Source: Macrostomum lignano (lineage: Eukaryota). Taken from it: 64,000 nt of DNA. The notes below the pieces were generated by a model that saw only the letters and a program-made list of their open reading frames with translations, was not told the origin of the DNA and searched no databases. Every line of letters begins with the position of its first letter. Position 1 is the first letter of the stretch. Position numbers and translations under genes: made by a program. Location of the stretch: contig NIVC01002176.1 in assembly GCA_002269645.1 (NCBI GenBank), positions 124,001-188,000 of the forward strand. The letters run 5' to 3'. Below are positions 24,011-61,432 of the stretch, piece after piece.

Positions 24011-28185
<4,175 letters not shown>

Positions 28186-34859: not shown

Positions 34860-35962
34860 ATGTCCACTTGTCTCATCACCGTTTTCGCGCTCTTGAGCTG
34901 CGGGTCTCCGATTGCGGCTGCCGTCAGCTCGAAATCTGGTGGGTGCGATTGGAAATTTGATTGCAGAAGACCCAAACTGAACAAAAATAGAGTATGAAAA
35001 AATAATTATCGCATTTCAGAGTTTTCTACTGAGGAGGTTTTGCAAACCACGACGGCTCCGATGACGTCACAGCCTGGTCGCAGCGCTGCGGACTGCGCGC
35101 TGAAATGCGAGCCCCTAGTTATGCCATACTGCTCCGCTTTCGCCTTTGTTCCTGAAAAGCAGATCTGCCTGCTCTCGGAACTGCAGAATGCGGACTTCGC
35201 GTCCGTGGCTCCCAGCGGCCCTGTCTATCGAAAGAAGAGCGACAGTGAGTTTTTGGGCCAGGGCGAGATATATGAGATGGAATTTAATATTGTAGCCCGC
35301 GTTCATCGTTTTTATTCTTTTAGAAAAGCTAGTCCAAATCAGCGGTCAATTATTCCAAGTGATCCAGCACAGATCGAAGGGAGAGCTCAGCTTTGCTCGC
35401 GGCTGGACTCAGTATGAGAACGGCTTTGAAGACGACACGGACTTCTGGATTGGTGAGGAGCGCATAAAATAGCTCGTAATTCTTTCGGACAGAATGCTTA
35501 GAGGGACAAAATATGATATCAAATAAATTTTCAGGTCTCCGTAAAATGCACGAGCTGACCGGAAGCTCTCCGAAGCTTCTGCGAGTCGAGGCCGTCACCT
35601 GGTCAAATGAGCTGTACGTCTGCGAGTACTCCGGCTTCACGGTGGCCGATGCCAGCACGAACTACACCATGACTTACACTTCGTACCTGAGCGGCAGCTC
35701 CAACACGACCAGCAATTCGCTCGCTCATAACAATGGGATGCAGTTCTCCACCGTGGACCGAGACAATGATAAATATGGACCCGCCTGTTCCAGCGGCCGT
35801 GGAAACTCAGGTTGGTGGTTCCAAAGCTGTTCAAAGTCCAATCCGAACGGGATCTTTCACGACTCTGCTGTGAGCGGACATGCATACATGTATTGGTCAG
35901 GCGCTACCGCTGGAGGCCTAGTTGCCCTAAAGAGCATTCGACTGATGATCCATCTGGTCTGA
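34860..35962 (+). CDS. Secreted PAN-FReD protein, family II copy A (exons 34860-34938, 35020-35244, 35324-35452, 35535-35962)
   Basis: Signal MSTCLITVFALLSCG; PAN core CALKC..YCSAFAFV..ICLLS; FReD motifs FQVIQHR..SFARGWTQYENGF..FWIGL..QFSTVDRDND..GWWF..C..SNPNG..LKSIRLMI; all junctions in frame. Confidence 0.9.
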
Positions 35963-36371
35963 TGTCACGGGCATTGGATACACACTCAAGTGCAAAATTA
36001 CTAAATGGAGTTCTCAGATAAGCTCTGTGATTCATTTGGGTACAAGAGTTAAGAAATGCACTGAAGATTTTTTCGCGAGGTTAATGTCGTGTTCAGATTT
36101 AACTTTTTAAGAAACTTGGAAATCTGTTAATTAACTTTAAATGAATAATTCAAACATTACTGATTGTCACTGATATCCAGCATAGCTGTGTCTGTTCGAT
36201 GTTTCAACGAAAAATTGTCCATGAGTACTTAGAGAGAATACTTCAACTTTTTATGGTATTTTGTGGCTTATCACTAACTTTTTCTGCTGATTTCTAACTG
36301 ATGTAGGAGTTGTGTCTCTTCAATTTTCTGACAATTCATACTTACATCTACAATAGAATCTACTGTCTCTA

Positions 36372-36490
36372 GGTGGGCACCCCTGCTGTCTCTTGGTGGA
36401 CACCCCTGCTGTCTCTTGGTGGGCACCCCTGCTGTCTCTTGGTGGGCACCCCTGCTGTCTCTTGGTGGGTAACCCTACTGTCTATTAGAC
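36372..36490. repeat. 23-bp tandem repeat (GGTGGGCACCCCTGCTGTCTCTT), ~5 copies
   Basis: Direct tandem units. Confidence 0.9.
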
Positions 36491-37478
36491 CCACATGAAT
36501 AGAAGCCACAGATGCCACATTGAAGAGGTTGAAGGGTGCATAAGTTGAGCTCCTGTCTTTCGTGGAGCTTGTTTGACCTCCTGTAGTTTTCTAAATAGCG
36601 CAGTTTTTTCGGGGAGATTAAAAGAGGTTGTTGAAGCCCCCCCCCATTTCCCCTTCTCCCTTTGATCGGTGCGAGCGTAGAAGTGATAAATTTTTACTTT
36701 CTTTTCTGCTTTGCTATCGTTAATTTTTTACGTCAACTTTCTTTTTTGTGTTCTATCGTGAAAATAAACAGGTATCTGCAGTTTTCTGTCTATTAGACAG
36801 CCGGTTTTTGTGACTTTGTGAATTTGTGACTTTGAGGCAATGAATGAATTATTGACACACGTTCATCGAGTTGAATGATTTTGCACAGACTCAATAGGCT
36901 TTTAGGGATAGAACTCCTCATTAGGTGGAATTTCGTGCGTTTCAACACGCAAGGGCTGGTTGCAATTAGCAAAGCTCCATGACTTCTACAAGCTGATGAA
37001 GCGCTTAAATATGCTATGTGTAACAATGCCGCCACAAAACCCGGCAATGTGGAGCCTCCCATATTTTCAGTTTCGAGAGCTGCAGTTAGCGACGCTAGTT
37101 TAAGAAAAACCGGAAAACTGCATCCCAGATGCGCACACGCACTGCTGTACTGACAATGGGTTTGAAAAAGTCTTTACTGTTCAATGCGCCAACGCTCCGG
37201 TTAGACATAAGGCCCCAGAATCGATGAAACTTCCTTTAATTGGCTTCTATTCATTTGAAGCAGCTTGCGCGAAATTACCGTCCTTAAATGCAGCTGCGCC
37301 TTTGTTAATGAGGAGATTTTAGGAGGCCTGCTTTGGAAACGCATCGACTCAAGCAGTTCAATAGCAACAACAGGTGCTTTAGGGAGGTAAAAGCGTTGAG
37401 ACAAAGCCAGCAACCAGAGACAGTCGGTTTTTAGGCGAGGCAACTAAAATCGAGCGGATTCATAACCTTGCCTGCAGC

Positions 37479-40400
37479 ATGTCCGCTTTTCTTGTCGCCG
37501 TTGCTGCGTGTCTAATCGGCGGGACTCCGTTTTTGACTGGGGCTGGAGCAGAAGCCGGTAAGTTCTATTGTACATTATAATTGACAGTTCAATATTTTTA
37601 TCATTTTTACGCATATACTGAAGTATTAGCAATTCATGCCGTTTATTTTTTCTGAGCTCACTGCACGTATCCGATATGCTGTAGCGACACCTAAAAGCTC
37701 CATCAACCCTGGGCCAGAAGAAAGTTCATTTCTACGTTTCAGTGTTTTCTACCGACGAGATTTTGCAAACAACGACGGCTCCGATGACGTCACAGCCTGG
37801 ACGCAGCGCTGTAGACTGCGCCTTTAAATGCGAGTTCTCGCCCGAAAGAGACTGCTCCTCTGTCGCCTTTGTTCCTGAGACGAAGCTCTGCCTCCTTTCC
37901 GAGCTGCAGAATGCCGAATTCGCGGCTGTCGCTCCCACTGGTCTGGTCTATCGAAAGAAACTGGACAGTAAGTTAAAGTTTATTCGACCTTATTGGAACA
38001 AACGACTTAAAATTATCAATAGATTGAGGCACTAGTACCTGCGAGCTCGTTGGTAACAAGGCTTTTTATTAGAGAATCTTCGGTTCGTTATTTTTAGAGG
38101 GGCCAATCCACATTGACGGCCGGACATTCCAAGTGATCCAGCACAGATCGAAGGGCGTGCTGAGCTTTGCTCGAGGCTGGACTCAGTATGAGGATGGCTT
38201 TGGAGACGATACGGACTTCTGGATTGGTGAGTTTCACGTTATTTGATGTTGGCCGTGACCCTTAAAAGGGCCGTTTTAGTCCCAAAATAAGTTGAAGTCA
38301 ACTTAGGCGAAGTGAATGGTGTAGCGGAGCACTTGGCAATAAGGGCAGGAAACTGCCGTAGTCGTTTTTATTATCAATATAAATAGTAAATTTGGTTGTT
38401 ACTGGCAAATAACAAACTATGGCTTTCTGGGCACTGGCGGCTGCAACAATGGTTTCTTTTTTGAAGATAAATTGGATGTGAGTTCAAGCGACAGACGAGT
38501 GATGTAATGGCGACGTAACGTGATGATCAATGGCAATGAGTACAGTGAAGGCAGTGAGACGTAGTAGGCAGGCAGATGAGCAGTGGCGAGGTTGGCGTCA
38601 GCCGTGGCGTGAGGTAAGGAGGCTCGAGGCAGCCAGACAGAGAGAAGGAAAACACACACAAGGCCAAGGACAGACGGGGAGAGAGAGCGAGGGAGAGAGA
38701 GGAGAGTGGAGTGCCCGCCGCCAGGCGGGGGGGTTTAATAAAGGAGCGCAGAGGGGGGTAGCGCGAAGCACGAGTGGTTTTCATTGGCTGGCGAGAGAAC
38801 TTAAAATTATCGATCGTGCCAATTTTATACGGTCGCGAGAGAGGATAGCAAAATATACAGTGAATTAGAAATTGCCACAAAATCGTTGGGCACTACTACA
38901 AGTAAACGTCGCAATAAACAAATGGAAAAGTTTAGTTGAAACGGTGAAACTGAAGGGTTGAAACTATAGAGAAACAGCAGTCCAACGGCCCTTTTCGGGA
39001 CCACCTTAAACTGACAACGTCACAGTGAGCACTGAGTCACTCAAAAAGATGAGGCCAAGCGTCTTGTAATTTCATTTTGATTTTTTAATATCAGATTTTA
39101 CTAAATGTAAAAAATTGAAAACTCTCTTTTAGTCTTTTTAGTGTTCAAAAATCGAAAACTAAAAAATCTTTAACTTGATCCTGTCGGTTTGTAACAGATT
39201 GCTCCACGAAATGAGCTCAAAATCAATATACGAGTATGCACGGAAACTGTGATGCAATAAGGAACTTTAAAATTCAAAACAGTGTGCTCTATTTCGTCAT
39301 ATATGTTCTTAAAAAAATTAATATTGTAACGGAACTTTATGTCCGGCTCTCCTGTCTGTTTCTACGATCAAAGATGCTGGTGTCTTTCGTGCTGATTTTC
39401 TGAGCTGAGAGAGTGCGGAATAGTCAACGTAAATTACAATTTCGTGGCTGTCACTACCCTATCACTCACTGTCGCACCTTTCCTAGATTACCTCTGGAGA
39501 CAGTGAAGCAGCGAAATGTTAAAATTCCTCGGAATCAATTTGAAATCTGTTTTTGAACAGCAGTGGTAGGGTGGCTTACAGTAGTCCACGAAGTACTAAA
39601 TTATGTTTACCTTCTCTTGTGTATCCGTCTAGTCTGAGGGAAAGTGGAATTTCCCGTAATTTCCCGAAGTAGCCTTTACTGTAGAAATCAGTTGTGATAC
39701 CTTCAGTTGCAAGTGATACCTAATCGTCAATTATATGAGCAATTCATATCAAGAACAGTCAGCTCTGGTCTCAGAATGCCTCAGTATTTCTGTTAAAATG
39801 ATGCAGAAGTATGTTCATGCTTGCGACATCATGATACGATGAGGAATGCAAAAATAGTCTCACAATGCACAAGGTCTAAAAACGACCTCATATTCATATT
39901 AATAGTGAAACTTCCGCTAGATATCTTTTAAAGCATTTAGAGTTTCTGTTCCTTTTGAAATACTGAATCATTTTATTGTAACTGTAAGTAGTAAATTCGA
40001 ATAGTTATTTAAAACAAGCTGCATGTAATAGCCAAGCAAACATATAGCTCGTATGGCCGATAACACTTAAAATTTTCAGGACTTCGCAAAATCCACGAGC
40101 TGACCGGAAGCTCGCCGAAGCTACTGCGAGTTAAAGCCGTCACCTGGTCGGATGAGCTGTACGTCTGCGAGTACTCCGGCTTCACGGTGGCCGATGCCAG
40201 CACGAACTACACCATGACCTACACTTCGTATCTGAGCGGCAGCTCCAACACGACCAGCGACTCGCTTGCTGCCAACAAGGGGATGCAGTTCTCCACCATG
40301 GACCGCGACAACGACAACTATGGATCTTCTTGTTCCAACCGACGTGGAAATTCCGGTTTGTGGTATAATGGCTGCTCTAGGTCTAATCCCAACGGAGTTT

Positions 40401-40507
40401 ATCGCTACTCAGCAGGGACTGATGAAGAATTCATGCACTGGGCAGGTGCTACATCTGAGAATTTTATCGCGCTAAAAAGTGTTCGCCTGATGCTCCAGTG
40501 GCCCTAA
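37479..40507 (+). CDS. Secreted PAN-FReD protein, family II copy B (exons 37479-37557, 37743-37967, 38098-38226, 40080-40507)
   Basis: Signal MSAFLVAVAACLIGG; exon lengths 79/225/129/428 identical to copy A; intact frame; last intron enlarged to 1853 nt. Confidence 0.88.
38255..39004. mobile_element. Possible non-autonomous DNA transposon inside the last intron of copy B
   Basis: Imperfect inverted repeat CCC(TT/G)AAAAGGGCCGTT at 38259-38275 and 38984-38999; no TSD identified. Confidence 0.35.
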
Positions 40508-41106
40508 CTTTTTCAATGTTCAGTTTTGATGAATAAGTTTTGATTGAGAAACAGACTATCAAATTTTCACATCCAGACAGTTTCTATAAAAAACGGAGAA
40601 AAACTGAGTTATATATACACAATAATCTTCTGATCCCCATAAACTTTGAGAGCAAAACTCCTTCGTTCTTCGTAGCTTTTAAAGTACTCAATGAATTTTG
40701 ATTAATTTTGTGCGTTCAGCGCAAACAATGAATACAATTCTGACAAGCGGAATGAAAGCTTCATTGTGCCGCATATTTCATATAGCTTACCGCAATGCCT
40801 TTCTGCTTGCAGTTCCATATAGTCTCTCTGCCTCAAAATTTAATTATAACAATGGGTGCCATGGGACTACTAATATATGACAAATTGACATGCCAAATTA
40901 TTGGAAATGCCTTAAGGATGGTATGGTTAGTCTTATTAAGAATATGGCTAAAAAGAAAAAATAAAAATATAGACATACTGTATTCATCTAATCTCAATAC
41001 ATGTAGTGTAACTCTGTCTCACTCGGAGATCAATATTTCAAGCTAATTCCCTCCGTTCTCTCTGCAAAATGTACAAATTTCTCTTATATGAGAGAAGCTA
41101 AGCCGA

Positions 41107-44100
41107 GCCTGTCTAACTGGTAAACCTGCCTGTCTAACTGGTAAACCAGCCTGTCTAACTGGTAAACCAGCCTGTCTAACTGGTAAACCTGCCTGTCTAA
41201 CTGTAAACCTGACTGTCTAACTGGTAAACCAGCCTGTCTAACTGGTAAACCTGCCTGTCTAACTGGTAAACCTGCCTGTCTAACTGGTAAACCTGCCTGT
41301 CTAACTGGTAAACCTGCCTGTCTAACTGGTAAACCTGCCTGTCTAACTGGTAAACCTGCGTGTCTAACTGGTAAACCTGCCTGTCTAACTGTAAACCTGC
41401 GTGTCTAACTGGTAAACCTGCCTGTCTAACTGGTAAACCTGCCTGTCTAACTGTAAACCAGCCTGTCTAACTGGTAAACCTGCCTGTCTAACTGGTAAAC
41501 CTGCCTGTCTAACTGGTAAACCTGCCTGTCTAACTGGTAAACCTGCCTGTCTAACTGGTAAACCTTTCTGTCTAACTGGTAAACCTGCCTGTCTAACTGG
41601 TAAACCTGCCTGTCTAACTGGTAAACATGCCTGTCTAACTGGTAAACCTGCCTGTCTAACTGGTAAACCTGCCTGTCTAACTGGTAAACATGCCTGTCTA
41701 ACTGGTAAACCTGCCTGTCTAACTGGTAAACCAGCCTGTCTACCTGGTAAACCAGCCTGTCTAACTGGTAAACCTGCCTGTCTAACTGGTAAACCTGCCT
41801 GTCTAACTGGTAAACCAGCCTGTCTACCTGGTAAACCTGCCTGTCTAACTGGTAAACCTGCCTGTCTAACTGGTAAACCTGCCTGTCTAACTGGTAAACC
41901 TGCCTGTCTAACTGTAAACCAGCCTGTCTAACTGGTAAACCTGCCTGTCTAACTGGTAAACCTGCCTGTCTAACTGGTAAACCTGCCTGTCTAACTGGTA
42001 AACCTGCCTGTCTAACTGGTAAACCTGCCTGTCTAACTGTAAACCAGCCTGTCTAACTGGTAAACCTGCCTGTCTAACTGGTAAACCTGCCTGTCTAACT
42101 GGTAAACATGCCTGTCTAACTGGTAAACCTGCCTGTCTAACTGGTAAACCAGCCTGTCTACCTGGTAAACCAGCCTGTCTAACTGGTAAACCTGCCTGTC
42201 TAACTGGTAAACCTGCCTGTCTAACTGGTAAACCAGCCTGTCTACCTGGTAAACCTGCCTGTCTAACTGGTAAACCTGCCTGTCTAACTGGTAAACCTGC
42301 CTGTCTAACTGGTAAACCTGCCTGTCTAACTGTAAACCAGCCTGTCTAACTGGTAAACCTGCCTGTCTAACTGGTAAACCTGCCTGTCTAACTGGTAAAC
42401 CTGCCTGTCTAACTGGTAAACCTGCCTGTCTAACTGGTAAACCAGCCTGTCTACCTGGTAAACCAGCCTGTCTAACTGGTAAACCTGCCTGTCTAACTGG
42501 TAAACCTGCCTGTCTAACTGGTAAACCAGCCTGTCTACCTGGTAAACCTGCCTGTCTAACTGGTAAACCTGCCTGTCTAACTGGTAAACCTGCCTGTCTA
42601 ACTGGTAAACCTGCCTGTCTAACTGTAAACCAGCCTGTCTAACTGGTAAACCTGCCTGTCTAACTGGTAAACCTGCCTGTCTAACTGGTAAACCTGCCTG
42701 TCTAACTGGTAAACCTGCCTGTCTAACTGGTAAACCTGCCTGTCTAACTGTAAACCAGCCTGTCTAACTGGTAAACCTGCCTGTCTAACTGGTAAACCTG
42801 CCTGTCTAACTGGTAAACATGCCTGTCTAACTGGTAAACCTGCCTGTCTAACTGGTAAACCAGCCTGTCTACCTGGTAAACCAGCCTGTCTAACTGGTAA
42901 ACCTGCCTGTCTAACTGGTAAACCTGCCTGTCTAACTGGTAAACCAGCCTGTCTACCTGGTAAACCTGCCTGTCTAACTGGTAAACCTGCCTGTCTAACT
43001 GGTAAACCTGCCTGTCTAACTGGTAAACCTGCCTGTCTAACTGGTAAACCAGCCTGTCTAACTGGTAAACCTGCCTGTCTAACTGGTAAACCTGCCTGTC
43101 TAACTGGTAAACCTGCCTGTCTAACTGGTAAACCTGCCTGTCTAACTGGTAAACCTGCCTGTCTAACTGTAAACCAGCCTGTCTAACTGGTAAACCTGCC
43201 TGTCTAACTGGTAAACCTGCCTGTCTAACTGGTAAACCAGCCTGTCTAACTGGTAAACCTGCCTGTCTAACTGGTAAACCTGCCTGTCTAACTGGTAAAC
43301 CTGCCTGTCTAACTGGTAAACCTGCCTGTCTACCTGGTAAACCAGCCTGTCTAACTGGTAAACCTGCCTGTCTAACTGGTAAACCTGCCTGTCTAACTGG
43401 TAAACCTGCCTGTCTAACTGGTAAACCTGCCTGTCTAACTGGTAAACCTGCCTGTCTACCTGGTAAACCAGCCTGTCTAACTGGTAAACCTGCCTGTCTA
43501 ACTGGTAAACCTGCCTGTCTAACTGGTAAACCTGCCTGTCTAACTGGTAAACCTGCCTGTCTAACTGGTAAACCTGCCTGTCTAACTGGTAAACCTGCCT
43601 GTCTAACTGGTAAACCTGCCTGTCTACCTGGTAAACCTTTCTGTCTAACTGTAAACCAGCCTGTCTAACTGGTAAACCTGCCTGTCTAACTGGTAAACCT
43701 GCCTGTCTAACTGGTAAACCTGCCTGTCTAACTGGTAAACCTGCCTGTCTACCTGGTAAACCTGCCTGTCTAACTGGTAAACCTGCCTGTCTAACTGGTA
43801 AACCTTTCTGTCTAACTGGTAAACCTGCCTGTCTAACTGGTAAACCTGCCTGTCTAACTGGTAAACCTGCCTGTCTAACTGGTAAACCTGCCTGTCTAAC
43901 TGGTAAACCTTTCTGTCTAACTGGTAAACCTGCCTGTCTAACTGGTAAACCTGCCTGTCTAACTGGTAAACCTGCCTGTCTAACTGGTAAACCTGCCTGT
44001 CTAACTGGTAAACCTTTCTGTCTAACTGGTAAACCTGCCTGTCTAACTGGTAAACCTGCCTGTCTAACTGGTAAACCTGCCTGTCTAACTGGTAAACCTG

Positions 44101-45649
44101 CCTGTCTAACTGGTAAACCTGCCTGTCTAACTGGTAAACCTGCCTGTCTAACTGGTAAACCAGCCTGTCTAACTGGTAAACCTGCCTGTCTAACTGGTAA
44201 ACCTGCCTGTCTAACTGGTAAACCTGCCTGTCTAACTGGTAAACCTGCCTGTCTAACTGGTAAACCTGCCTGTCTAACTGTAAACCAGCCTGTCTAACTG
44301 GTAAACCTGCCTGTCTAACTGGTAAACCTGCCTGTCTAACTGTAAACCAGCCTGTCTAACTGGTAAACCAGCCTGTCTAACTGGTAAACCAGCCTGTCTA
44401 ACTGGTAAACCAGCCTGTCTAACTGGTAAACCAGCCTGTCTAACTGGTAAACCTGCCTGTCTACCTGGTAAACCTTTCTGTCTAACTGTAAACCAGCCTG
44501 TCTAACTGGTAAACCTGCCTGTCTAACTGGTAAACCTGCCTGTCTAACTGTAAACCAGCCTGTCTAACTGGTAAACCTTTCTGTCTAACTGTAAACCTGC
44601 CTGTCTAACTGGTAAACCTGCCTGTCTAACTGGTAAACCTGCCTGTCTAACTGTAAACCAGCCTGTCTAACTGGTAAACCAGCCTGTCTAACTGGTAAAC
44701 CAGCCTGTCTAACTGGTAAACCTGCCTGTCTAACTGGTAAACCTGCCTGTCTAACTGGTAAACCTGCCTGTCTAACTGGTAAACCTGCCTGTCTAACTGG
44801 TAAACCTGCCTGTCTAACTGTAAACCAGCCTGTCTAACTGGTAAACCTGCCTGTCTAACTGGTAAACCTGCCTGTCTAACTGTAAACCAGCCTGTCTAAC
44901 TGGTAAACCTGCCTGTCTAACTGGTAAACCTGCCTGTCTAACTGTAAACCAGCCTGTCTAACTGGTAAACTAGCCTGTCTAACTGGTAAACCAGCCTGTC
45001 TAACTGGTAAACCTGCCTGTCTAACTGGTAAACCTGCCTGTCTAACTGGTAAACCTGCCTGTCTAACTGGTAAACCTGCCTGTCTAACTGGTAAACCTGC
45101 CTGTCTAACTGGTAAACCTGCCTGTCTAACTGGTAAACCTGCCTGTCTAACTGGTAAACCTGCCTGTCTAACTGGTAAACCTGCCTGTCTAACTGGTAAA
45201 CCTGCCTGTCTAACTGGTAAACCTGCCTGTCTAACTGGTAAACCTGCCTGTCTAACTGGTAAACCTGCCTGTCTAACTGGTAAACCTGCCTGTCTAACTG
45301 GTAAACCTGCCTGTCTAACTGGTAAACCTGCCTGTCTAACTGGTAAACCTGCCTGTCTAACTGGTAAACCTGCCTGTCTAACTGGTAAACCAGCCTGTCT
45401 AACTGGTAAACCTGCCTGTCTAACTGGTAAACCTGCCTGTCTAACTGGTAAACCTACCTGTCTAACTGGTAAACATGCCTGTCTAACTGTAAACATGACT
45501 GTCTAACTGGTAAACCTGCCTGTCTAACTGGTAAACCTGCCTGTCTAACTGGTAAACCTGCCTGTCTAACTGGTAAATCTGCCTATCTAACTGGTAAACC
45601 TGCCTGTCTAACTGTAAACCAGCCTGTCTAACTGTAAACATGACTGTCT
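41107..45649. repeat. 21-bp satellite (CTGCCTGTCTAACTGGTAAAC), ~4.5 kb, ~215 copies
   Basis: Highly homogeneous tandem array with recurrent variant units. Confidence 0.98.
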
Positions 45650-47580: not shown

Positions 47581-48776
47581 ATGCAATCAATCCTCATTGC
47601 CGTTGCTGTCGCTCTCTGCAGCGGCTCAACTGTTTGGACTCTGGACAGTGCAGCATCTGGTAAGTCAAGCTTTTTGAATGAGTGTGGAAGTACTTCAGTA
47701 GTTGTTAAGAAGGTTTAAATTCATGCGATTTGCAGTGTTTTCTCAAGAGGAAGTTGCGCACACCACACCTGCTCCGATTCACCACGAGCCTGGTCGAAGC
47801 GTCGCTGACTGCGCTCTGAAATGCGAGCAGCCCATCGTGAAGTTCTGCTCCGCCTTCGCCTTCGTGCCAGAGAAGAAGGTCTGCCTGCTCTCCGAGATAC
47901 CGACTGCCGATTTTGCACCTGCCGCTCCTGGTGAACTGGTTTATCGAAAGCTTATGGCTAGTAAGTTTTAAATCGAGCCTGTGTTCACTAATAATAAAAT
48001 GAATAGCTGTGAATTCTCAAAAATTGTGAAAAGAATAAGTCGCTCAACGGATAGCTAAAATCAATCGCTTTGATTAATAAATGAATTCATTAGTTCACGC
48101 ACCGCTAGACACACTTAAACATTGTTTGCTTTTTTGATATATCAGAACGAATCGTCCAGATCAACGGACTAGAATTCCAAGTGATTCAGCACAGGTCGAA
48201 GGGCGAGCTGAGCTTTGCTCGCAGCTGGACTGAGTATGAGAACGGCTTTGGAGACGATACGGACTTCTGGATTGGTGAGCAGGACACTTTAGCTTTACCA
48301 AACACCAATCGAATCAATAAAGACTTAAGGATAATTTCATTTTTTTTATTTCAGGCCTTCGAAAAATCCATGAGCTGACCGGGAGCTCGCCGAAGCTTCT
48401 GCGAGTCGAGGCCGTCACCTGGTCGGATGAGCTGTATGTCTGCGAGTACTCCGGCTTCACAGTGGCTGATGCCAGCACGAACTACACCATGACTGGCATT
48501 TCGTACCTGAGCGGCAGCTCCAACACGACTGCCAATTCGTTCACTTTTAACAGGGGGATGCAGTTCTCCACCATGGACCGGGACAACGACCAATTTGTAA
48601 ATCATTGTTCCAGCAGCTTTGGAAACTCCGGTTGGTGGTTCAAAAGCTGCTCGCATACCAACCCAAACGGTATCTATTATAGCACTGCTATTACTAAAAC
48701 AAATACAATGCACTGGGCTAGTGCTACATCCGGGAATGATGTTGCACTGAAGAGCATTCGATTGATGATCCATTAG
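47581..48776 (+). CDS. Secreted PAN-FReD protein, family II copy C (exons 47581-47659, 47736-47960, 48146-48274, 48355-48776)
   Basis: Signal MQSILIAVAVALCSG; PAN core CALKC..FCSAFAFV..VCLLS; full FReD with DRDND and GWWF; all junctions in frame. Confidence 0.9.
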
Positions 48777-49485
48777 GTTTGATGATAATTAGCAGTCACC
48801 TGCCTACGTTGAGCTGGAGCCAACTATTTTAATAACATCAAACTGGTATCTCACGTGGCAGTTGAGCAATCCAACTCACTCAAGACTATAACCGTACGAG
48901 AAAATAAGTGTAAGTGAGCTTTAGTAGGAAACATTACCAAGGAGCTGTAATCCATTGATGCGAGCGTTGCGGTTTACGATCGTGTGAATCTTTTTTGACT
49001 CTTAATATTCAAGCTTAGGCAGTAACTCAGTACGTCAGTCTAATGAAAAATTACTGATAAAAATGCATTCGTTTTTTGTTCAGAAAAAGTTGTCAAGTTT
49101 CTTAAAAAAAACTGTGTATTCCTGTCTATTTCTGTGTATCTGTGAACAACTACACTTTGTATGACAAACGTTCCTTCTCGCTTTCTCACTTTCTCAAAAA
49201 ATCACAACTGCGGTACTCAAAAAACCTTGGCCTCCATTGTGAAAAAATCTTAAAATGTAAGCTTTTCAAAAATTTTTTTGATTATTGACAAAATCATTTT
49301 CTAACCCGTGCGTTTCTAATTCATATTCATATTTTTGCAAACCGTCCAAGATTCCGAGTTACATAAACTGAAACTAAATTTTTCGTTATGTAAACTTTTC
49401 TTGCTCTTAGCCTAATGTATTCCACACTGTACCACTAATCCATCCTGGAAGTGTTTTGCTAGCAGATAATCTCAGTAAGTATTCC

Positions 49486-49985
49486 CCGCTGCCATAGACA
49501 GCACTCTCCATATTCCCAGCTGCCATAGACAGCACTCTCCATATTCCCAGCTGCCATAGACAGCACTCTCCATATTCCCCGCTGCCATAGACGGCACTCC
49601 ATATATTCTCCACGCTGCCATAGACAGCACTCTCCATATTCCCCGCTGCCATAGACAGCACTCTCCATATTCCCAGCTGCCATAGACAGCACTCTCCATA
49701 TTCCCCGCTGCCATAGACAGCACTCTCCATATATTCTTCATGCTGCCATAGACAGCACTCTCCATATTCCCAGCTGCCATAGACAGCACTCTCCATATTC
49801 CCAGCTGCCATAGACAGCACTCTCCATATTCCCAGCTGCCATAGACAGCACTCTCCATATTCCCAGCTGCCATAGACAGCACTCTCCATATTCCCCGCTC
49901 CCATAGACAGCGAGCGCTCTCCATGTATTCTCCCACTGCCATAGACAGCAATCTCCATATTCCCAGCTGCCACAGACAGCACTCC
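49486..49985. repeat. 31-bp minisatellite (GCTGCCATAGACAGCACTCTCCATATTCCC[A/C]), ~16 copies
   Basis: Tandem units; 31-aa periodic ORFs on the minus strand. Confidence 0.94.
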
Positions 49986-50562: not shown

Positions 50563-52390
50563 CAGGGGCGTCGCCATGGATTTTATGTGTGGGGACGAAG
50601 CCAAGAATTCTACATGCACAGGATTTAATTCGTAAATGCGCATTGTTTTGAGAATCGGTATCGTTAGCGCTCATTTCGGCACCGTAGGCACTTGTATTGG
50701 CGCCGCAGGCAGGCACTCATTTTGGCGCCGCAGGGAGGCACTCATTTTGGCGCCGCAGGCAGGCACTCATTTTGGCGCCGCAGGGAGGCACTCATATTGG
50801 CGCCGCAGGCAGGCACTCATTTTGGCGCCGCAGGCAGGCACTCATTTTGGCGCCGCAGGCAGGCACTCATTTTGGCGCCGCAGGGAGGCACTCATTTTGG
50901 CGCCGCAGGCAGGCACTCATTTTGGCGCCGCAGGCAGGCAATCATTTTGGCGCCGCAGGCAGGCACTCATTTTGGCGCCGCAGGCAGGCACTCATTTTGG
51001 CGCCGCAGGGAGGCACTCATTTTGGCGCCGCAGGCAGGCACTCATTTTGGCGCCGCAGGCAGGCACTCATTTTGGCGCCGCAGGCAGGCAATCGTTTTGG
51101 CGCCGCAGGGAGGCACTCATTTTGGCGCCGCAGGCAGGCACTCATTTTGGCGCCGCAGGGAGGCACTCATTTTGGCGCCGCAGGGAGGCACTCATTTTGG
51201 CGCCGCAGGCAGGCACTCATTTTGGCGCCGCAGGCAGGCAATCATTTTGGCGCCGCAGGCAGGCACTCATTTTGGCGCCGCAGGCAGGCACTCATTTTGG
51301 CGCCGCAGGGAGGCACTCATTTTGGCGCCGCAGGCAGGCACTCATTTTGGCGCCGCAGGCAGGCACTCATTTTGGCGCCGCAGGCAGGCAATCGTTTTGG
51401 CGCCGCAGGGAGGCACTCATTTTGGCGCCGCAGGCAGGCACTCATTTTGGCGCCGCAGGGAGGCACTCATTTTGGCGCCGCAGGCAGGCACTCATTTTGG
51501 CGCCGCAGGCAGGCACTCATTTTGGCGCCGCAGGGAGGCACTCATTTTGGCGCCGCAGGGAGGCACTCATTTTAGCGCCGCAGGGAGGCACTCATTTTGG
51601 CGCCGCAGGCAGGCACTCATTTTGGCGCCGCAGGGAGGCACTCATTTTGGCGCCGCAGGCAGGCACTCATTTTGGCGCCGCAGGGAGGCACTCATTTTGG
51701 CGCCGCAGGGAGGCACTCATTTTGGCGCCGCAGGCAGGCACTCATTTTGGCGCCGCAGGCAGGCACTCATTTTGGCGCCGCAGGCAGGCACTCATTTTGG
51801 CGCCGCAGGCAGGCACTCATTTTGGCGCCGCAGGCAGGCACTCATTTTGGCGCCGCAGGCAGGCACTCATTTTGGCGCCGCAGGCAGGCACTCATTTTGG
51901 CGCCGCAGGCAGGCACTCATTTTGGCGCCGCAGGGAGGCACTCATTTTGGCGCCGCAGGCAGGCACTCATTTTGGCGCCGCAGGCAGGCAATCATTTTGG
52001 CGCCGCAGGCAGGCACTCATTTTGGCGCCGCAGGCAGGCACTCATTTTGGCGCCGCAGGGAGGCACTCATTTTGGCGCCGCAGGCAGGCACTCATTTTGG
52101 CGCCGCAGGCAGGCACTCATTTTGGCGCCGCAGGCAGGCAATCGTTTTGGCGCCGCAGGGAGGCACTCATTTTGGCGCCGCAGGCAGGCACTCATTTTGG
52201 CGCCGCAGGGAGGCACTCATTTTGGCGCCGCAGGGAGGCACTCATTTTGGCGCCGCAGGCAGGCACTCATTTTGGCGCCGCAGGCAGGCATACATTTTGG
52301 CGCCGCAGGCAATCATTTTGCATGGCGCCGCATCCAGGCAATCCTTTTGGCATCGCGCAGGGAGGCGCTCATTTTGTAGTGGGGGGGGGG
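50563..52390. mobile_element. hAT MITE of the same family as 46467-46768 (opposite orientation) with an internally amplified satellite; distal end not found
   Basis: 50563-50700 (CAGGGGCGTCGCCATGGATTTTATG..GACGAAGCCAAGAATTC..TTTTGAGAATCG) aligns to the reverse complement of ~46620-46768. Confidence 0.8.
50690..52310. repeat. 25-bp satellite (GCAGG[C/G]AGGCACTCATTTTGGCGCC), ~65 copies
   Basis: Tandem units; 25-aa periodic ORFs in three frames. Confidence 0.97.
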
Positions 52391-54376: not shown

Positions 54377-54436
54377 CTGAAGGAAGAGGAGTGAGGGATG
54401 GCATAGATCTAGGGATTGTTGAGTGGAACAATCCAT

Positions 54437-56080: not shown

Positions 56081-56650
56081 TTGATGGGTAAGATTCAGTC
56101 TGACGACATCGAAGCGCGGTTCGGATGGATTCGTCAACTCAGTGGAGCCAATTACTTCATTTCGATGCGGCAACTTACCGAGAGTGACAAAAAGATTAAA
56201 GCTATTTCGCTTCTCAGATATTCAGGTCTGACAGTGCGCGATCTGGACAAAGCGCTTCTGAAAAGGACCTGTCCGGATAGTAACAAGACACGCAAACTGG
56301 CGGCTGAGATTCGTGAAGAAGCTTGTCTTAACTGTCTACCGGACGAAAGTAACACGGCCATAGTTTATTATGTTAGTGGTTTCTGCGCGCGTTCGTTAGT
56401 TAGAACGAACAAGTGTGAATCATGCAAACATACTCTGGTGTGCGAAAATCCGATTGTTGACTTTGAATTTGAAGAGACGTCTCAAATGAAAGAATCGTCG
56501 GAATTTCTTCGTGAAATCGATCGAGGTGGTCTCTTCTGGCCGCAGGAGCATCTGTTTCAGTTGGGCATGCTGTGATGGCGTGTCTTTACAGAAGTCAAGA
56601 ACACACCCAACCTTAAGCACAAATTTCTGTCAGCTTTCAATCAAACTTTG
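56081..56650 (+). mobile_element. P-element/THAP9-superfamily transposase C-terminal fragment
   Basis: GKIQSDDIEARFGWIRQLSGANYFIS, VYYVSGFCARSL..CESC, IDRGGLFWP; in-frame stop at 56573-56575. Confidence 0.75.
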
Positions 56651-56659
56651 ATTGGAAGT

Positions 56660-58639
56660 CAAACAAATCAAACTTTGACTTGTTCGACGAGATCAAGAAG
56701 GTCGCCTTTCTTCGGCCGGTAGAAACACGTTGGCTGCAACTTCTTCCAGTCGTTCAGCGTGTGCTTCGCATGTATCAACCGATTGTCCGCTTCTTTTCTG
56801 ACTCAAAGACAAAGGCTACTGGCGCCAACTTTGCCGCTATTAAGGCTGACGTGCGAGACCCCAAGGTTGAGTTTTTTCTGACTTTTCTAGCAGAGGTTCT
56901 CCAGCCACTGCAGCAATTCGAGATGCTGTTTTAACAGCAGGGTTGCCAGATTCATCATCTGTATTCGCAGCTCGTGGATGTTACCAAGCGCTGGCTCCTA
57001 CGCTTTGTAAAACAGAGAAGCTGCCAAAGAAGAAGCTTTCGAAGCTGGACATCGCGGACGAGTCAATTTGGCTGCCGCCATACGAGATCAGCATGGGTGA
57101 ACCTGCCAAGCGTCATTTTGTTGACAGGACAGGAGAGAATCAGCAGGAGTGTCTTGTGTCTGTGAAGGCATTCTTCAGGACTGGTACAGCCAAGCTTTTC
57201 GACTATCTGCCGCTAAATAACAGCATTCTCTGCGCCTGCCAGCTCCTCGATCCCAAGAAGCAAGGCAGCAAAGATTTTGTGCAATGGGCTTCCACCTTGG
57301 CCAAACATCTGCCAGTGGTTGTGCCCGACACGGAGATCGGCAACTTGGAGACTGAGGCGCGCCTTCACCAACTTCACCTGAAGGAGACACCAGGCACAGG
57401 CACAGCCATGGACATGACTGTGACAGACTTCTGGAGTTACATTGCCGCTGACACGGACAGAAGTCGTCCTCTCCTATTGCGTCTGGTCCAAGCGTTGCTT
57501 GTTCTGCCTCATGGCAACGCAGATGTGGAACGCGTGTTCAGCAGTCTAAGTGATGCTGTCACGAAGAAGCGCTGCAGTCTTGCACCACAAACAGTGAAGG
57601 CGATTCTAGTAGCCCACTCCTGCCTGCAGGTGAAGCAGTGGTCTGCAGCAACTATTCCGATTGTTCCACAGCTGCAGAACATGTGTGCCAGTGCTTGTGC
57701 TGCTTATCGTCAGCGCCTGCAAGACGAGAAGATTGCTGCCGAGCGGGAACGAACACAGCAACTGGAAGCCAGTGTCGTGACGGAGCTGCAGGCTGAGAAG
57801 AAAGCCAGCAAAAAGTGTACACGCACCTGGACAAGTCGCTGGAGCAGGTCGAGCTGGACATCCAGCGGAAGCAAAAGGAGAAGGAAGACTCCCATAAGCT
57901 GCTTCACGAGTTGACGGCGGCCACCAAGAGCAAGGACGCCGAGATTGAAGAACTGAGGCGTCAGCAGCAGAATGTGCAGAAGAAGAAGCAGAAGGAGGCA
58001 GAGAAGCTAGCTGAGCTCGTCTTGAAGCGCAAGGCTGCTGAGCTGCTGTCAACGTCGTCAATCACCAGCACGAGCAGTCGTCTGTCTGCAGACATCGCCA
58101 ACAAGAAGTTCAGGCGGGACACGGCTGGGACTTGAGAGACATGCTAATTGGTAGCCAGACGCATGCTGCTAATGACAACTGTTGCAAATTGGAAATTGCA
58201 CGTCATGTGTGACTGTGAAGTTCACGTCATACAACAAACTATTTTAACTGATTTATTTTTTTTGCATATACAGTGTCTTGTAATTGTGAATTCGCCAACA
58301 TGCATATTCAGCACAATGCTTACTTTTCTTTCTGCGGCAATCTTTCTTTTGTCTGTGTTGTCTGGTTTGTTTGTTGTCTGGCTTGTTTGTTATCTGGATT
58401 GGACAAATCACAAGTATAAAGCAAAATTATGCATCTTAACAAGTGTCATCAATTGACTTATTTGGCTGTCAGTAGAATATTATTGGCATGGCGCGAAAAC
58501 TTTCAGTCGGCGCGAAATTTGGCAAACTTTCCAATCACACCACTGAATCAAAGGGAGACATTTTATTTCGTGATGGACCTCGTGCTGACAGATCATGGTG
58601 ACTTTCTATTTGGTAGGACACACTGCACCGCTGGCCCTG
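56660..58639 (+). mobile_element. 5'-truncated hAT transposon (decayed transposase plus right end)
   Basis: LRPVETRWLQL, FFLTFL..VLQPLQQF, dimerisation motif ALLVLPHGNADVERVFS..KKRCSL; stop and frameshifts; right end CACTGCACCGCTGGCCCTG (rc CAGGGCCAGC..) ending at 58639. Confidence 0.82.
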
Positions 58640-60053
58640 ATCTGGCCATGGTCCGCGAGATAATCAACAGGTTTTTTCAATTGCATGTCCAAGATGCTAA
58701 CAAAACAGATTAATCAAGCTGAGACAAACAAAACATTGAAGAGGAAGTTTACGAAACTGCAAAAACTCACAGGTGGGAAGCATTGATTTTGATGCGTGGT
58801 GCCCACTAACAATTTTGCGTATAGCCAGACTGGCGTAACTGGCCTGGCAAAAGTGAGATTCATTTAGTTTTATTGCTGTATTCTTTCTCTGCTTGCCAGA
58901 CATTTCTGAATTGTGCTTACAGTTTTTGTTTCTTTTTGTTTGCTCTTCGATGCATTTTCTCAACACAGTTTATAAGCCATCTATTCTTGCTTTGCTTGCT
59001 TGACATACTCCTGTGCCTACTTGTGTTACATCTAGAAATTGATATAATTTCAACGTCTTCTTAAGTCGCGTTTCATTCCTCTGCTTTTGTTATTGTTTCG
59101 GAAGTATATTTTTGTAAGGGGTTTTTCAGTAATGAGGCGAGAGCAAGGCGGCGGTTCAACTGGTTAATGGGTTTATAGAATAATGTTATTGGAATCTAGA
59201 AAAGATTCGTGAAGAGATTCCAGCTGAGCTGCTGTATATTTATAATGTTGAGATGCTCTTCCGGAAAGTTCTAGAAATATATAATGCATTATAACAAAAT
59301 GATTATTAAGAAAATACTGCTAGTTATTTATCGCTAGTTTTACCCACAGACTGCGAATACTTGTTAATTATTAAATATATTGAAATGCAGTAAATGAGAA
59401 ATTGCTTCAGACACAGAACTTTCTAGAAAACGTACGAATAGAAATTTCTCGAAGGTCACTACACTTTGAAATACGATCCTTCTTTTTGAATACTCTGTGT
59501 TTACATCGCACGCTTGCGATCTCTAATCTTGGCCTCATCTTGTATAGCTGATATTTCAGTTTTTATTCCAGTTGCTAGATTTAGAATTCCTTGACTGGGC
59601 GATAAGATCTACACATTTCGGCCCATAGACATGAGTTTCGAGCGAGCACTTTTGAAAATTGTCAATCGTTTCCTAAAAGCTTCATAAATCCGAAAAAGCT
59701 ACAATTTGTCCCTCGTCACTTGTCACTTGTCAAATTGTCGCTTGTCACTTGTAGTTTTCTCATGAAATCCACTCCAGTAGGGCAGTCATGCAGAACTGAC
59801 GACTTCGAGAAATGCGAAAAAAACAGATGGAGAGGCAGAGCCATGGGGATGCGTTAACCGTGAGGGCAAGAAACAAGTCAAGAAGGGGAGCAGCTGGTTG
59901 GCGCATTGTCTTTTACTAGCTCAGCCTCGCATGCGCCCCGCCCCGCAGTCCCGAGTAACCATGGGAAAGTTTTTGTCACGCAAATAAAAAAGAACATACG
60001 ATGGTGAGAATAGGGACGGAGTTGAACCGCTCGTGCTAAGCGAATTCGACAGC

Positions 60054-61432
60054 ATGTCTCGATTCCTACTAGCTGTTGGATTCTCCCTGTGCCTGCTGAC
60101 TGTTGTCAGCGCCGAGACTGGTACGTTGCATTAACAGATAAGACTGTCTTCTTTCAGAACTCGTATATCTTTGATCAATACTCGCACATGTCAAGTTGAT
60201 GCGCAAAATGTTTCATTGCAGTTTTTTACACTGATGAGGCTATCCAGACAACATCTACTCCAACGACGGTAGCGTCTGGTGGCAGCCTGACCGAGTGCGC
60301 GCTGAAATGCAAGCTGCAATTCCTGAAGGGCTGCTCCGCTGCCGCCTTTGTATCTGGGACGCAAAAATGCCTCCTCGCGGACACAACCAATGCCGACTTT
60401 CCTGGCGGAGTAGCTGTCCGAAAGCAAGCTGCGAGCACTCGTAAGAAGCTGAATGCGATGGCTGTTAAGTTTGGCTACGCTTTACTTTAACCAAATCACT
60501 TCAGACCTTACCGTGTTCCAAACAGAAAATAGCTGTTAATTTGTGCACAAACTTAGCAACCATATGTTGATTAATGTTCACCTTACTAAGAGTAAGTGTA
60601 TGTCATTATCCGCCACAACTGTGATATTTTAGAATACTTAATAGCAACTTAAAATGAGTGTAGCAACCAAAAGTTATACTTTTTGAGCACAGTTACATGT
60701 AGACTGCTCAATATATTACAGCTATTCTCTGTCGGCAACTAACGAATGAGTTCGAAAAGAATTCAATGACAACAGAGAATTGATTGCGATTATTTTTCAG
60801 AAGACCCAGTTCAAATCGAAGGCCGAACATTTAAAATCATTCAACACCGATCGAAGGGAGTGCTCAGCTTCGGTCGCGGATGGACTGAGTATGAGGACGG
60901 CTTTGGAGATGAGACCGACTTCTGGATTGGTGAGCAGTAATGGATTGTCACCAGAAAGGAATACATGCCATAGTTAAGGTGTCATATCAAATACATTTTG
61001 AGGTCTGAGAAAAATTCACCAGCTGACCGGAAGCTCGCCGAAGCTTCTGCGAGTCGAGGCCGTCACCTGGTCGGATGAGCTGTACGTCTGTGAGTACTCC
61101 GGCTTCACGGTGGCCGATGCCAGCACGAACTACACCATGACCTACACTTCGTACCTGAGCAGCAGCTCCAACACGACTAGCGACTCGCTTGCGGATAACA
61201 AAGGGAGGCAGTTCTCCACAATTGACCGCGACAATGACCAAATCAGTAGCTCCTGCTCTGCTGCGCGTGGCAACTCCGGTTGGTGGTTTAAAAGCTGCTC
61301 AAAGTCCAACCCGAACGGAATTTATCACGCCTCTCCGAAGAATAATATGAGAACTATATTTATTGGATAGGCGCTACAGGTAACAGTGTGTTGACACTGA
61401 AGAGCATCCGACTCATGCTACAGCTGGCCTGA
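60054..61432 (+). pseudogene. Family II PAN-FReD copy D (exons 60054-60120, 60222-60440, 60801-60929, 61003-61432) with a 1-nt frameshift near 61350; pseudogene or assembly error
   Basis: Signal MSRFLLAVGFSLCLLTVVSA; PAN core CALKC..GCSAAAFV..KCLL; FReD intact to NPNG. It then stops at 61368-61370, while the shifted frame continues ENYIYWIGATGNSVLTLKSIRLMLQLA-stop. The last acceptor is an atypical GAG. Confidence 0.8.

What the first reader, a model, noticed from the sequence alone, without database searches (positions are those of the whole stretch)
35745..61400. Hypervariable loops map to the predicted ligand-binding surface of family II FReDs
Between fixed anchors (DRDND, C, GxSGxW, C, NPNG, W, LKS) the loops differ in every copy. 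After DRDND: KYGPACSSGR / NYGSSCSNRR / QFVNHCSSSF / QISSSCSAAR. After NPNG: IFHDSAVSGHAYMY / VYRYSAGTDEEFMH / IYYSTAITKTNTMH / IYHASPKNN.ENYIY. Established: in ficolins and tachylectin-5A this P-subdomain forms the Ca2+ and acetyl-sugar site. Inference: diversifying selection on specificity, in an antibody-like framework/CDR pattern.
Basis: partly seen in the sequence, partly recalled or inferred. Interest (0 to 1): 0.7.

Follow-up and report, generated by a model that had tools for sequence, protein, structure and literature searches.

The report
Flatworm lectin-like genes with variable loops
Four neighbouring genes of the flatworm Macrostomum lignano encode small secreted fibrinogen-type lectin-like proteins that differ mainly in three loops at the usual sugar-binding site, but those loops change at about the neutral rate, so selection for diversity is not shown.

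Summary
Four tandem + strand genes (A 34860-35962, B 37479-40507, C 47581-48776, D 60054-61432) carry exactly the quoted anchors and loop sequences. Variable columns are strongly concentrated in the loops (Fisher p 5e-8 to 1e-10). The window is Macrostomum lignano. Each gene has four exons: signal peptide, a PAN/apple-like 4-Cys module, and a fibrinogen-related domain (FReD) that lacks the A subdomain. The two Ca2+ aspartates and the disulfide cysteines are kept. The canonical pocket residues are not. Diversifying selection is not supported. A nominal M1a/M2a signal over the whole FReD (p 0.004-0.036) comes from uneven synonymous divergence: dS is 0.22-0.37 in the 5' half of exon 4 and 0.78-1.17 in the 3' half. 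With local dS, loop omega is 0.72-0.81, the M2a signal vanishes in the less saturated sets (p 0.57-1.0), and the framework omega is about 0.13. This is a lineage-specific lectin-type gene expansion with near-neutral binding-site loops: a known kind of system with an unusual domain architecture.

The parts
34860..35962 (+). Gene A, intact, 286 aa. Exons 34860-34938 (signal peptide), 35020-35244 (PAN-like module), 35324-35452 (FReD part 1), 35535-35962 (FReD part 2 including the P domain).
   Evidence: Spliced model with GT-AG introns and an open frame; tblastn of family proteins.
37479..40507 (+). Gene B, intact, 286 aa. Exons 37479-37557, 37743-37967, 38098-38226, 40080-40507. Intron 3 is 1853 bp.
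47581..48776 (+). Gene C, intact, 284 aa. Exons 47581-47659, 47736-47960, 48146-48274, 48355-48776.
   Evidence: 96% identical to M. lignano protein P0001.
60054..61432 (+). Gene D. Exons 60054-60120, 60222-60440, 60801-60929, 61003-61432. The frame is broken at 61347-61348 in this window. An intact product (P0002) is on record.
35756..35770 (+). DRDND Ca2+ motif of A (also B 40301-40315, C 48576-48590, D 61224-61238). The 2nd and 3rd Asp correspond to FIBCD1 Asp393 and Asp395.
35771..35800 (+). Variable loop 1 of A, KYGPA-C-SSGR (B 40316-40345, C 48591-48620, D 61239-61268). It covers the Ca2+ loop, whose carbonyl ligands are at C1-4 and C1-2, then Cys1, then the position of pocket Tyr405 (C1+4 = R/R/F/R).
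35852..35893 (+). Variable loop 2 of A (B 40397-40438, C 48672-48713, D 61320-61363). It contains the positions equivalent to pocket Tyr431/Ala432 (C2+17/18 = HA/EE/TN/YE).
35909..35923 (+). Variable loop 3 of A, AGGLV (B 40454-40468, C 48729-48743, D 61379-61393). It lies around the position equivalent to pocket Trp443/Tyr248 (C2+29).
35537..35716 (+). Low-dS block, the 5' half of exon 4 of A (B 40082-40261, C 48357-48536, D 61005-61184). Nucleotide distance among A-D is 0.07-0.11 here, against 0.30-0.36 in the 3' half.

Best explanation
This is a tandem cluster of four paralogous genes of a Macrostomum lignano-specific subfamily of fibrinogen-related-domain (FReD) proteins. Each encodes a small secreted protein of about 285 aa: a signal peptide, a PAN/apple-like 4-Cys module, and a FReD that keeps the B and P subdomains but has lost the A subdomain. 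The P domain keeps the Ca2+-binding Asp pair and the disulfide that ties the Ca2+ loop to the binding pocket. The residues that build the acetyl pocket (S1) in FIBCD1, TL5A and the ficolins are replaced, and they differ from copy to copy. The copies most likely act as extracellular Ca2+-dependent binding proteins (lectin-like recognition molecules) whose specificity is set by three P-domain loops. These loops have diverged by ordinary birth-and-death evolution at close to the neutral rate (omega about 0.7-0.9), meaning relaxed constraint with at most a few selected sites. The scaffold is under strong purifying selection (omega about 0.13), and the 5' part of exon 4 is additionally kept alike at the nucleotide level. 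Shown: gene structure, family membership, fold, location of the variability, and substitution rates. Inferred: secretion, Ca2+ binding, ligand binding at the loops, and a role in recognition.
For: The four-exon GT-AG models have conserved exon lengths of 79/225/129/428 nt. All 14 word-index homologues are M. lignano 'Fibrinogen C-terminal domain-containing' proteins with PF00147. The exhaustive profile search finds 276 representative proteins at E<=1e-30, and every close relative whose source was checked is M. lignano. PDB profile hits (E 1e-32 to 1e-25) start at chain position about 38-45, so the A subdomain is missing. The AlphaFold model has pLDDT 85 and TM 0.73-0.78 to ficolins and ANGPTL2, with rmsd 1.7-1.9 A over about 180 columns. 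The best PDB matches of the N-terminal module are all PAN/apple domains. The S1 and Ca2+ positions were mapped from PMC3908420. Variability is concentrated in the loops. Rates: framework omega is 0.12-0.15. Loop omega is 0.90-1.25 under one global dS and 0.72-0.81 on the P-domain half alone. It is 0.45 when the loops get their own rate multiplier. M2a is not better than M1a for the 4- and 5-gene P-domain sets.
Against: There is no expression, secretion or binding data. The signal peptide was judged by eye. The whole-FReD M1a/M2a tests are nominally significant (p 0.004-0.036), and the candidate sites lie almost entirely in the three loops, so a minority of positively selected sites cannot be excluded. 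Only 8 coding sequences were available, the deep branches are saturated (tree length about 14-17 neutral substitutions per codon), and the loops hold only 32 codons, so power is low. A loop omega of 0.7-0.9 can be a mixture of constrained and selected sites. The codon models were my own implementation and not PAML or HyPhy.
Confidence: 0.6

Rival explanations
1. One reading: the three loops are under diversifying (positive) selection for new ligand specificities, as in immune recognition repertoires, and the scaffold is conserved around them.
For: M1a vs M2a over the whole FReD gives LRT 11.05 or 8.74 (8 genes) and 7.75 or 6.67 (5 genes), p 0.004-0.036. Nearly all sites with posterior >0.5 lie in loops 1-3. 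Loop dN (0.47-0.87) exceeds the FReD-wide framework dS (0.43-0.66) in 5 of 6 pairs among A-D. The variable positions are those that form the S1 pocket in homologues.
Against: The signal depends on pooling a low-dS block with the P domain. On the P-domain half alone the LRT is 0 to 1.1 (p 0.57-1.0) for 4 or 5 genes and 5.7-6.1 (p 0.046-0.059) for 8 genes, with an implausible omega2 of about 100. The loop partition omega is 0.72-0.81, and it is significantly below 1 in the 8-gene set (p 0.03). With a loop-specific rate multiplier, omega_loop is 0.45. No site reaches posterior 0.95 in the unsaturated 5-gene set (the saturated 8-gene set gives 0.98-0.99 at alignment column 308).
Confidence: 0.25
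2. The pattern is largely a mosaic made by gene conversion. The linked copies repeatedly homogenise the B-subdomain part (exon 3 and the 5' half of exon 4), while the 3' P-domain part escapes. The 'framework versus hypervariable loops' contrast therefore partly reflects different ages of the segments and not different selection.
For: Nucleotide distance among A-D is 0.07-0.11 in the 5' half of exon 4 and 0.30-0.36 in the 3' half. dS is 0.22-0.37 against 0.78-1.17. D groups with A-C in exon 3 and the 5' half of exon 4 (0-0.5% of bootstraps place it nearer F), but with the unlinked paralogue F in the PAN exon (78%). PAN and FReD favour different A/B/C topologies.
Against: Intron 3, which lies between the two homogenised exon parts, cannot be aligned apart from its last ~20 nt, which are alike in A and D. 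The same block also has lowered dS between unlinked paralogues (0.47-0.95 against >1.2 elsewhere), which fits synonymous-site constraint as well as conversion.
Confidence: 0.35
3. The loops are functionally irrelevant. The S1 pocket has decayed, and the proteins work through the PAN-like module or as structural or oligomeric components, so loop variability is simple drift.
For: None of the canonical pocket residues is kept (C1+4 R/R/F/R, C2+1 Ser, C2+17/18 variable). The inter-Cys segment is 13 residues, against 12 in 90 of 103 generic FReDs. Loop omega is near 1. PAN/apple domains can themselves be lectins, for example the Sarcocystis SML-2 hit.
Against: The Ca2+ Asp pair, both cysteines and the GNSGWW and NPNG motifs that shape the site are invariant under strong purifying selection despite dS of about 1. 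Loop omega is below 1 in the 8-gene set, which indicates residual constraint.
Confidence: 0.15

Closest known systems
Acetyl-group-binding FReD lectins: FIBCD1, tachylectin-5A, M-, L- and H-ficolins
   Same: They share the FReD B+P fold (TM 0.73-0.78, rmsd about 1.9 A to ficolins), the Ca2+ Asp pair, the Cys-Cys link between the Ca2+ loop and the pocket, and the N-x-N-G turn.
   Different: The window genes have no A subdomain, no collagen-like, coiled-coil or transmembrane region, and a PAN-like module in their place. All S1 pocket residues (Tyr, His, Tyr-Ala, Tyr/Trp) are replaced and variable. The inter-Cys segment is one residue longer, and the turn reads NPNG, not NLNG.
Lineage-specific FReD/FREP expansions of invertebrates (oyster FBG-domain proteins, Biomphalaria FREPs, mosquito and Drosophila FREPs)
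   Same: These are large, species-restricted, tandemly arranged families of secreted FReD proteins with divergent recognition domains (PMC4346834; PMC1242226 listed).
   Different: The N-terminal partner differs: a PAN-like module and not the IgSF domains of Biomphalaria FREPs. The FReD is truncated. There is no evidence here for somatic diversification, immune induction or positive selection.
PAN/apple + FReD proteins of other invertebrates (e.g. Mytilus protein P0129)
   Same: A Cys-rich PAN-like module lies N-terminal to a FReD.
   Different: Those proteins keep a complete FReD with the A subdomain and the VYC..GGW strand. The Macrostomum family joins the PAN-like module directly to the B subdomain.

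Membership tests
Fibrinogen-related domain (Pfam PF00147 Fibrinogen_C) | Significant profile or sequence match to FReDs | tested here: met
   The homologues carry PF00147. The family profile hits 68 distinct PDB FReD sequences at E<=1e-5, the best at 6.6e-32.
Fibrinogen-related domain (Pfam PF00147 Fibrinogen_C) | Complete three-subdomain fold (A, B, P), including the N-terminal disulfide and the VYCDM..GGGWTV strand | tested here: not met
   PDB alignments begin at chain position about 38-45. The GGGW insert and the A-subdomain cysteines are absent. The exon structure leaves no room for an A-subdomain exon, since intron 2 is 79-360 bp with no further reading frame. Only the B and P subdomains are present.
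Fibrinogen-related domain (Pfam PF00147 Fibrinogen_C) | Predicted 3D fold superposes on solved FReDs | tested here: met
   The model of paralogue E has pLDDT 85. Foldseek E is about 4e-15, with TMt 0.73-0.78 and rmsd 1.7-1.9 A over 177-184 columns to ficolins and ANGPTL2.
Ca2+-dependent acetyl-binding FReD lectins (FIBCD1/TL5A/ficolin type) | Ca2+ site Asp pair (FIBCD1 Asp393/Asp395) and the Cys401-Cys414 pair | tested here: met
   D at C1-8 and C1-6 and both cysteines are invariant in all 8 paralogues and in the 10-sequence alignment. Metal binding itself was not tested.
Ca2+-dependent acetyl-binding FReD lectins (FIBCD1/TL5A/ficolin type) | S1 acetyl pocket: Tyr at C1+4, His at C2+1, Tyr-Ala at C2+17/18, Tyr/Trp at C2+29 | tested here: not met
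   C1+4 is R/R/F/R, C2+1 is S in all four copies, C2+17/18 is HA/EE/TN/YE, and C2+29 falls in variable loop 3.
Ficolins | Collagen-like region N-terminal to the FReD | tested here: not met
   The full gene models have only a signal peptide and a 74-aa 4-Cys module before the FReD.
Biomphalaria-type FREPs | One or two IgSF domains upstream of the FReD; somatic diversification | tested here: not met
   There is no IgSF domain, and the N-terminal module resembles PAN/apple. Somatic diversification cannot be tested from one assembly.
PAN/apple domain | Beta-sheet plus helix fold with conserved disulfide cysteines; profile match | tested here: inconclusive
   The four Cys have the spacing C-x3-C-x8-9-C-x11-C. 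The predicted secondary structure is strand-helix-strand-strand-strand (pLDDT 80). The 38 best Foldseek PDB hits are all PAN/apple domains, but they are weak (E 4e-3 to 0.16, TMq 0.43-0.55). There is no Pfam PAN hit and no PDB sequence hit.
Positively selected hypervariable recognition sites ('CDR-like') | dN/dS significantly above 1 at the variable sites | tested here: not met
   Loop omega is 0.72-0.81 with local dS. M2a against M1a gives p 0.57-1.0 for 4-5 genes and p about 0.05 for 8 saturated genes. The signal over the whole FReD is explained by dS heterogeneity. Power is limited.

The most novel reading that the evidence does not exclude
The cluster is part of a flatworm-specific recognition repertoire. 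In it, gene conversion keeps a common scaffold (exon 3 and the 5' half of exon 4) alike among linked copies, while selection maintains different binding loops in the P domain. That would be an MHC- or R-gene-like regime, built on an unusual PAN-like + A-less FReD architecture with a re-invented, non-acetyl binding pocket.
Probability: 0.15. Interest if true: 0.55.

Novelty: new variant of a known kind. Interest (0 to 1): 0.3.

Why it matters
Lineage-specific expansions of FReD lectins are a recurrent way for invertebrates to widen innate recognition. Free-living flatworms are hardly explored in this respect: the paper searches found nothing on a Macrostomum FReD family. The family shows that a FReD can lose its A subdomain, take a PAN-like module in its place, and keep the Ca2+ site while the acetyl pocket is rebuilt differently in each paralogue. 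M. lignano is a transgenic, RNAi-amenable laboratory model, so specificity and function could be tested directly. The analysis also gives a methodological caution. A standard site-model test returned a 'significant' signal of positive selection that was caused by uneven synonymous divergence along the gene.

Tried and rejected
1. The exhaustive protein search would not accept a spliced model, so an alignment of database proteins and window exons was used.
2. DNA for the UniRef-only paralogues P0008 and P0012 is not on record, so only 8 coding sequences could be analysed.
3. Pairwise Nei-Gojobori dS within the loops is too noisy (few sites, many multi-step codons) and was not relied on.
4. M2a on all 8 genes gave omega2 of about 100-150, which I treat as a saturation artefact and not an estimate.
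5. The N-terminal module has no sequence match in the PDB. Only the fold search pointed to PAN/apple.
6. Rfam found nothing in the window, so there is no known RNA element to explain the low-dS block.
7. Recent gene conversion as the reason for anchor conservation inside the P domain was rejected, because dS there is about 1.
8. Mapping variable sites on 3D coordinates was not possible, because the structure tool returns no coordinates. The mapping rests on residue offsets from a published structure.
9. The literature searches found no paper on Macrostomum FReDs.
Full report
WHAT IS THERE

The window is eukaryotic. It has introns, long minisatellites and a hAT-like transposase ORF.

From splice sites and the conservation between copies I built four gene models, each with four exons and GT-AG introns:
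- A: 34860-34938, 35020-35244, 35324-35452, 35535-35962.
- B: 37479-37557, 37743-37967, 38098-38226, 40080-40507.
- C: 47581-47659, 47736-47960, 48146-48274, 48355-48776.
- D: 60054-60120, 60222-60440, 60801-60929, 61003-61432.

Exon lengths are conserved: 79/225/129/428 nt in A and B, with small deviations in C and D. A, B and C are open (284-286 aa). D has two bases (61347-61348) where database protein P0002 has a Tyr codon. P0002 is otherwise 100% identical across D's last exon, so an intact version exists elsewhere. The assembly that holds related loci also shows a 2-bp frame break in another copy. I therefore cannot tell a real pseudogene from an assembly error.

ORGANISM AND FAMILY

All 14 word-index homologues of copy C are Macrostomum lignano 'Fibrinogen C-terminal domain-containing' proteins with Pfam PF00147. 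The best is 96% identical. An exhaustive profile search of 1.84 billion representatives finds 12,818 FReD proteins at E<=0.001 and 276 at E<=1e-30. The closest ones, and all those with the same architecture whose source I looked up, are from M. lignano. One Mytilus protein has a PAN-like module in front of a complete FReD. M. lignano is a hidden tetraploid (PMC5704211, listed), which explains near-identical extra copies such as P0001 and P0005.

ARCHITECTURE

Each protein has a hydrophobic N-terminal signal-like exon, a 74-aa module with four cysteines, and a FReD.
- A family profile hits solved FReDs (ANGPTL2, tenascin-R, ficolins, angiopoietins, fibrinogen chains, FIBCD1) at E 7e-32 to 1e-25. 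The alignments start at chain position about 38-45. The A subdomain, its cysteines and the GGGW insert are missing, and the introns leave no room for them.
- An AlphaFold model of paralogue E (P0004) has pLDDT 85 and pTM 0.78. It superposes on ficolins, ANGPTL2 and FGL1 with TM 0.73-0.78 and rmsd 1.7-1.9 A over about 180 columns. Its lowest confidence within the FReD is in the variable loops.
- The N-terminal module has no sequence match in the PDB. Modelled alone (pLDDT 80), its 38 best structural matches are all PAN/apple domains: plasminogen, the HGF N domain, the Sarcocystis SML-2 lectin and others. The scores are weak, with E 4e-3 to 0.16 and TMq 0.43-0.55. I call it PAN/apple-like, as an inference.

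IS THE VARIABILITY CONCENTRATED, AND WHERE?

Yes. Adding a third stretch after W-x-G-A-T gives 27 of 30 against 29 of 112 (p 1.5e-10). In a 14-member core-family alignment, the entropy peaks are at FReD positions 118-127, 135-140, 145-158 and 160-168. Mean entropy is 2.12 bits in the loops and 0.87 outside. The PAN-like module is more divergent overall than the FReD (43-72% identity among A-D against 71-76%). 'Fixed framework' therefore applies only within the FReD.

DOES IT MAP TO THE BINDING SITE?

The FIBCD1 structure paper (PMC3908420) states the following:
- The Ca2+ ligands are Asp393, Asp395 and the carbonyls of residues 397 and 399.
- The Cys401-Cys414 disulfide (Cys206-Cys219 in TL5A) links that site to the S1 acetyl pocket.

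As offsets from the two cysteines, these positions are C1-8, C1-6, C1-4, C1-2, C1+4, C2+1, C2+17/18 and C2+29. In the window genes:
- C1-8 and C1-6 are the invariant second and third Asp of DRDND.
- C1-4 and C1-2 lie in loop 1. They act through the backbone, so their side chains are free to vary.
- C1+4 is R/R/F/R.
- C2+1 is Ser.
- C2+17/18 is HA/EE/TN/YE, inside loop 2.
- C2+29 falls in loop 3.

The inter-Cys segment is 13 residues, against 12 in 90 of 103 generic FReDs. Loop lengths differ by one residue, so the C2+17/18 and C2+29 assignments are good to about one position. I could not obtain coordinates, so spatial clustering is inferred and not measured.

IS IT DIVERSIFYING SELECTION?

I obtained DNA for four more paralogues from assembly GCA_002269645.1: E (=P0004), an unannotated neighbour H, F (=P0003) and G (=P0006). 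I built a codon alignment and analysed it with Nei-Gojobori counts and with my own maximum-likelihood codon models (M0, M1a, M2a and fixed partitions, F3x4 frequencies, shared neutral-scaled branch lengths).

Over the whole FReD:
- Framework omega is 0.135-0.15.
- Loop omega is 0.90 (8 genes) or 1.25 (5 genes). Neither differs from 1.
- M2a beats M1a nominally: LRT 11.05 or 8.74 for 8 genes and 7.75 or 6.67 for 5 genes, p 0.004-0.036.
- The candidate sites are almost all in the three loops. In the 5-gene set none has posterior above 0.95; the saturated 8-gene set gives 0.98-0.99 at alignment column 308. Omega2 is an implausible ~150 in the 8-gene set.

The nucleotide alignment then showed that synonymous divergence is very uneven:
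- In the first 180 nt of exon 4, A-D are 89-93% identical (dS 0.22-0.37).
- In the 3' half, non-loop codons have dS 0.78-1.17, and the PAN exon has 0.60-1.14.
- Against the local dS, loop dN (0.47-0.87) gives a ratio of 0.45-1.0.

Re-fitting on the P-domain half alone:
- M2a against M1a gives LRT 0 to 1.1 (p 0.57-1.0) for 4 or 5 genes, and 5.7-6.1 (p 0.046-0.059, omega2 about 100) for the saturated 8-gene set.
- The loop partition omega is 0.72-0.81, significantly below 1 in the 8-gene set (p 0.03).
- Allowing the loops their own rate in the full FReD gives a multiplier of 2.1 and omega 0.45.
- Codons that encode identical amino acids differ more often in the loops (42-56%) than in the framework (28-37%).

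Power is limited: 32 loop codons, 8 sequences and saturation on the deep branches. A few selected sites cannot be excluded.

THE LOW-dS BLOCK

In exon 3 and the 5' half of exon 4, copy D groups with its neighbours A-C. In the PAN exon it groups with the unlinked paralogue F (78% of bootstraps). PAN and FReD also favour different A/B/C topologies. This mosaic fits gene conversion among the linked copies. Two facts are not explained by that. Intron 3 is not alignable apart from its last ~20 nt, which are alike in A and D. The same block also has reduced dS between unlinked paralogues, so constraint on synonymous sites is an alternative. Rfam finds no RNA family there. This remains unresolved. 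It does not explain the anchors inside the P domain, which sit in sequence with dS of about 1 and omega of about 0.13 and so are under purifying selection.

MOST LIKELY MECHANISM

These are small secreted proteins that use a Ca2+-stabilised P-domain surface, and possibly the PAN-like module, to bind extracellular ligands. The paralogues differ in that surface because the loops tolerate almost any change. The scaffold is strongly constrained. Function in recognition or immunity is inferred by analogy with other invertebrate FReD expansions (PMC4346834). No expression or binding data exist in the searched literature.

COMPARISON AND NOVELTY

The family belongs to the FReD superfamily in its B and P subdomains. 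It fails the defining features of the acetyl-binding lectins (S1 pocket), of ficolins (collagen region) and of Biomphalaria FREPs (IgSF domains). The phenomenon of a lineage-specific tandem FReD expansion with a variable P domain is known. The architecture (PAN-like module + A-less FReD, pocket residues not conserved) appears to be undescribed. I rate it a new variant of a known kind, of modest interest.

Noticed in passing
window 35537-35716 (A), 40082-40261 (B), 48357-48536 (C), 61005-61184 (D): The 5' half of exon 4 is 89-93% identical at the nucleotide level among the four copies (dS 0.22-0.37), while the 3' half has dS 0.78-1.17. D groups with A-C here and in exon 3, but with the unlinked paralogue F in the PAN exon. 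This points to gene conversion among linked copies or to constraint on synonymous sites. Intron 3 is largely unalignable.
   Followed up: partly
window 61347-61348: Copy D has two bases where the otherwise identical protein P0002 has a Tyr codon, which breaks the frame inside loop 2. This could be a real pseudogene, a haplotype or homeologue difference, or an assembly indel. It is undecided.
   Followed up: partly
window ~1198-1653 (-), ~9333-9857 (-), ~17474-17926 (+): Three further, distant FReD-like coding stretches (23-30% identity to family II proteins by tblastn).
   Followed up: no
window 41107-45649, 49480-49984, 50686-52376: Large minisatellite arrays lie between the gene copies: a 21-bp unit x 217 copies, a 31-bp unit x 16, and a 25-bp unit x 68. 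They create long spurious ORFs on both strands.
   Followed up: no
window 56081-57914 (+): ORFs of 164, 84 and 323 aa resemble a hAT-family transposase. I recognised the C-terminal dimerisation-type motif from memory and did not test it. They lie between copies C and D.
   Followed up: no
window 38227-40079: Intron 3 of copy B is 1853 bp, against 73-82 bp in A, C and D. It holds a low-complexity, Arg/Glu-rich ORF (38530-38868), probably an insertion.
   Followed up: no
L001 7940-9100 and 13547-13759: The locus of paralogue E (P0004) contains an unannotated neighbouring family member (H) with a 2-bp frame break at 8836. It also contains an orphan PAN-like exon fragment downstream with an internal stop.
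   Followed up: partly
window exon 2 of each gene (A 35020-35244, B 37743-37967, C 47736-47960, D 60222-60440): The N-terminal 4-Cys module has no Pfam or PDB sequence match, but its model hits only PAN/apple domains structurally. It replaces the FReD A subdomain and is more divergent among copies (43-72% identity) than the FReD.
   Followed up: partly
window 18001-20000 and 24001-26000: The composition profile shows extreme AT and GC skews here (AT skew -0.41 and -0.80), which suggests strand-biased simple repeats.
   Followed up: no
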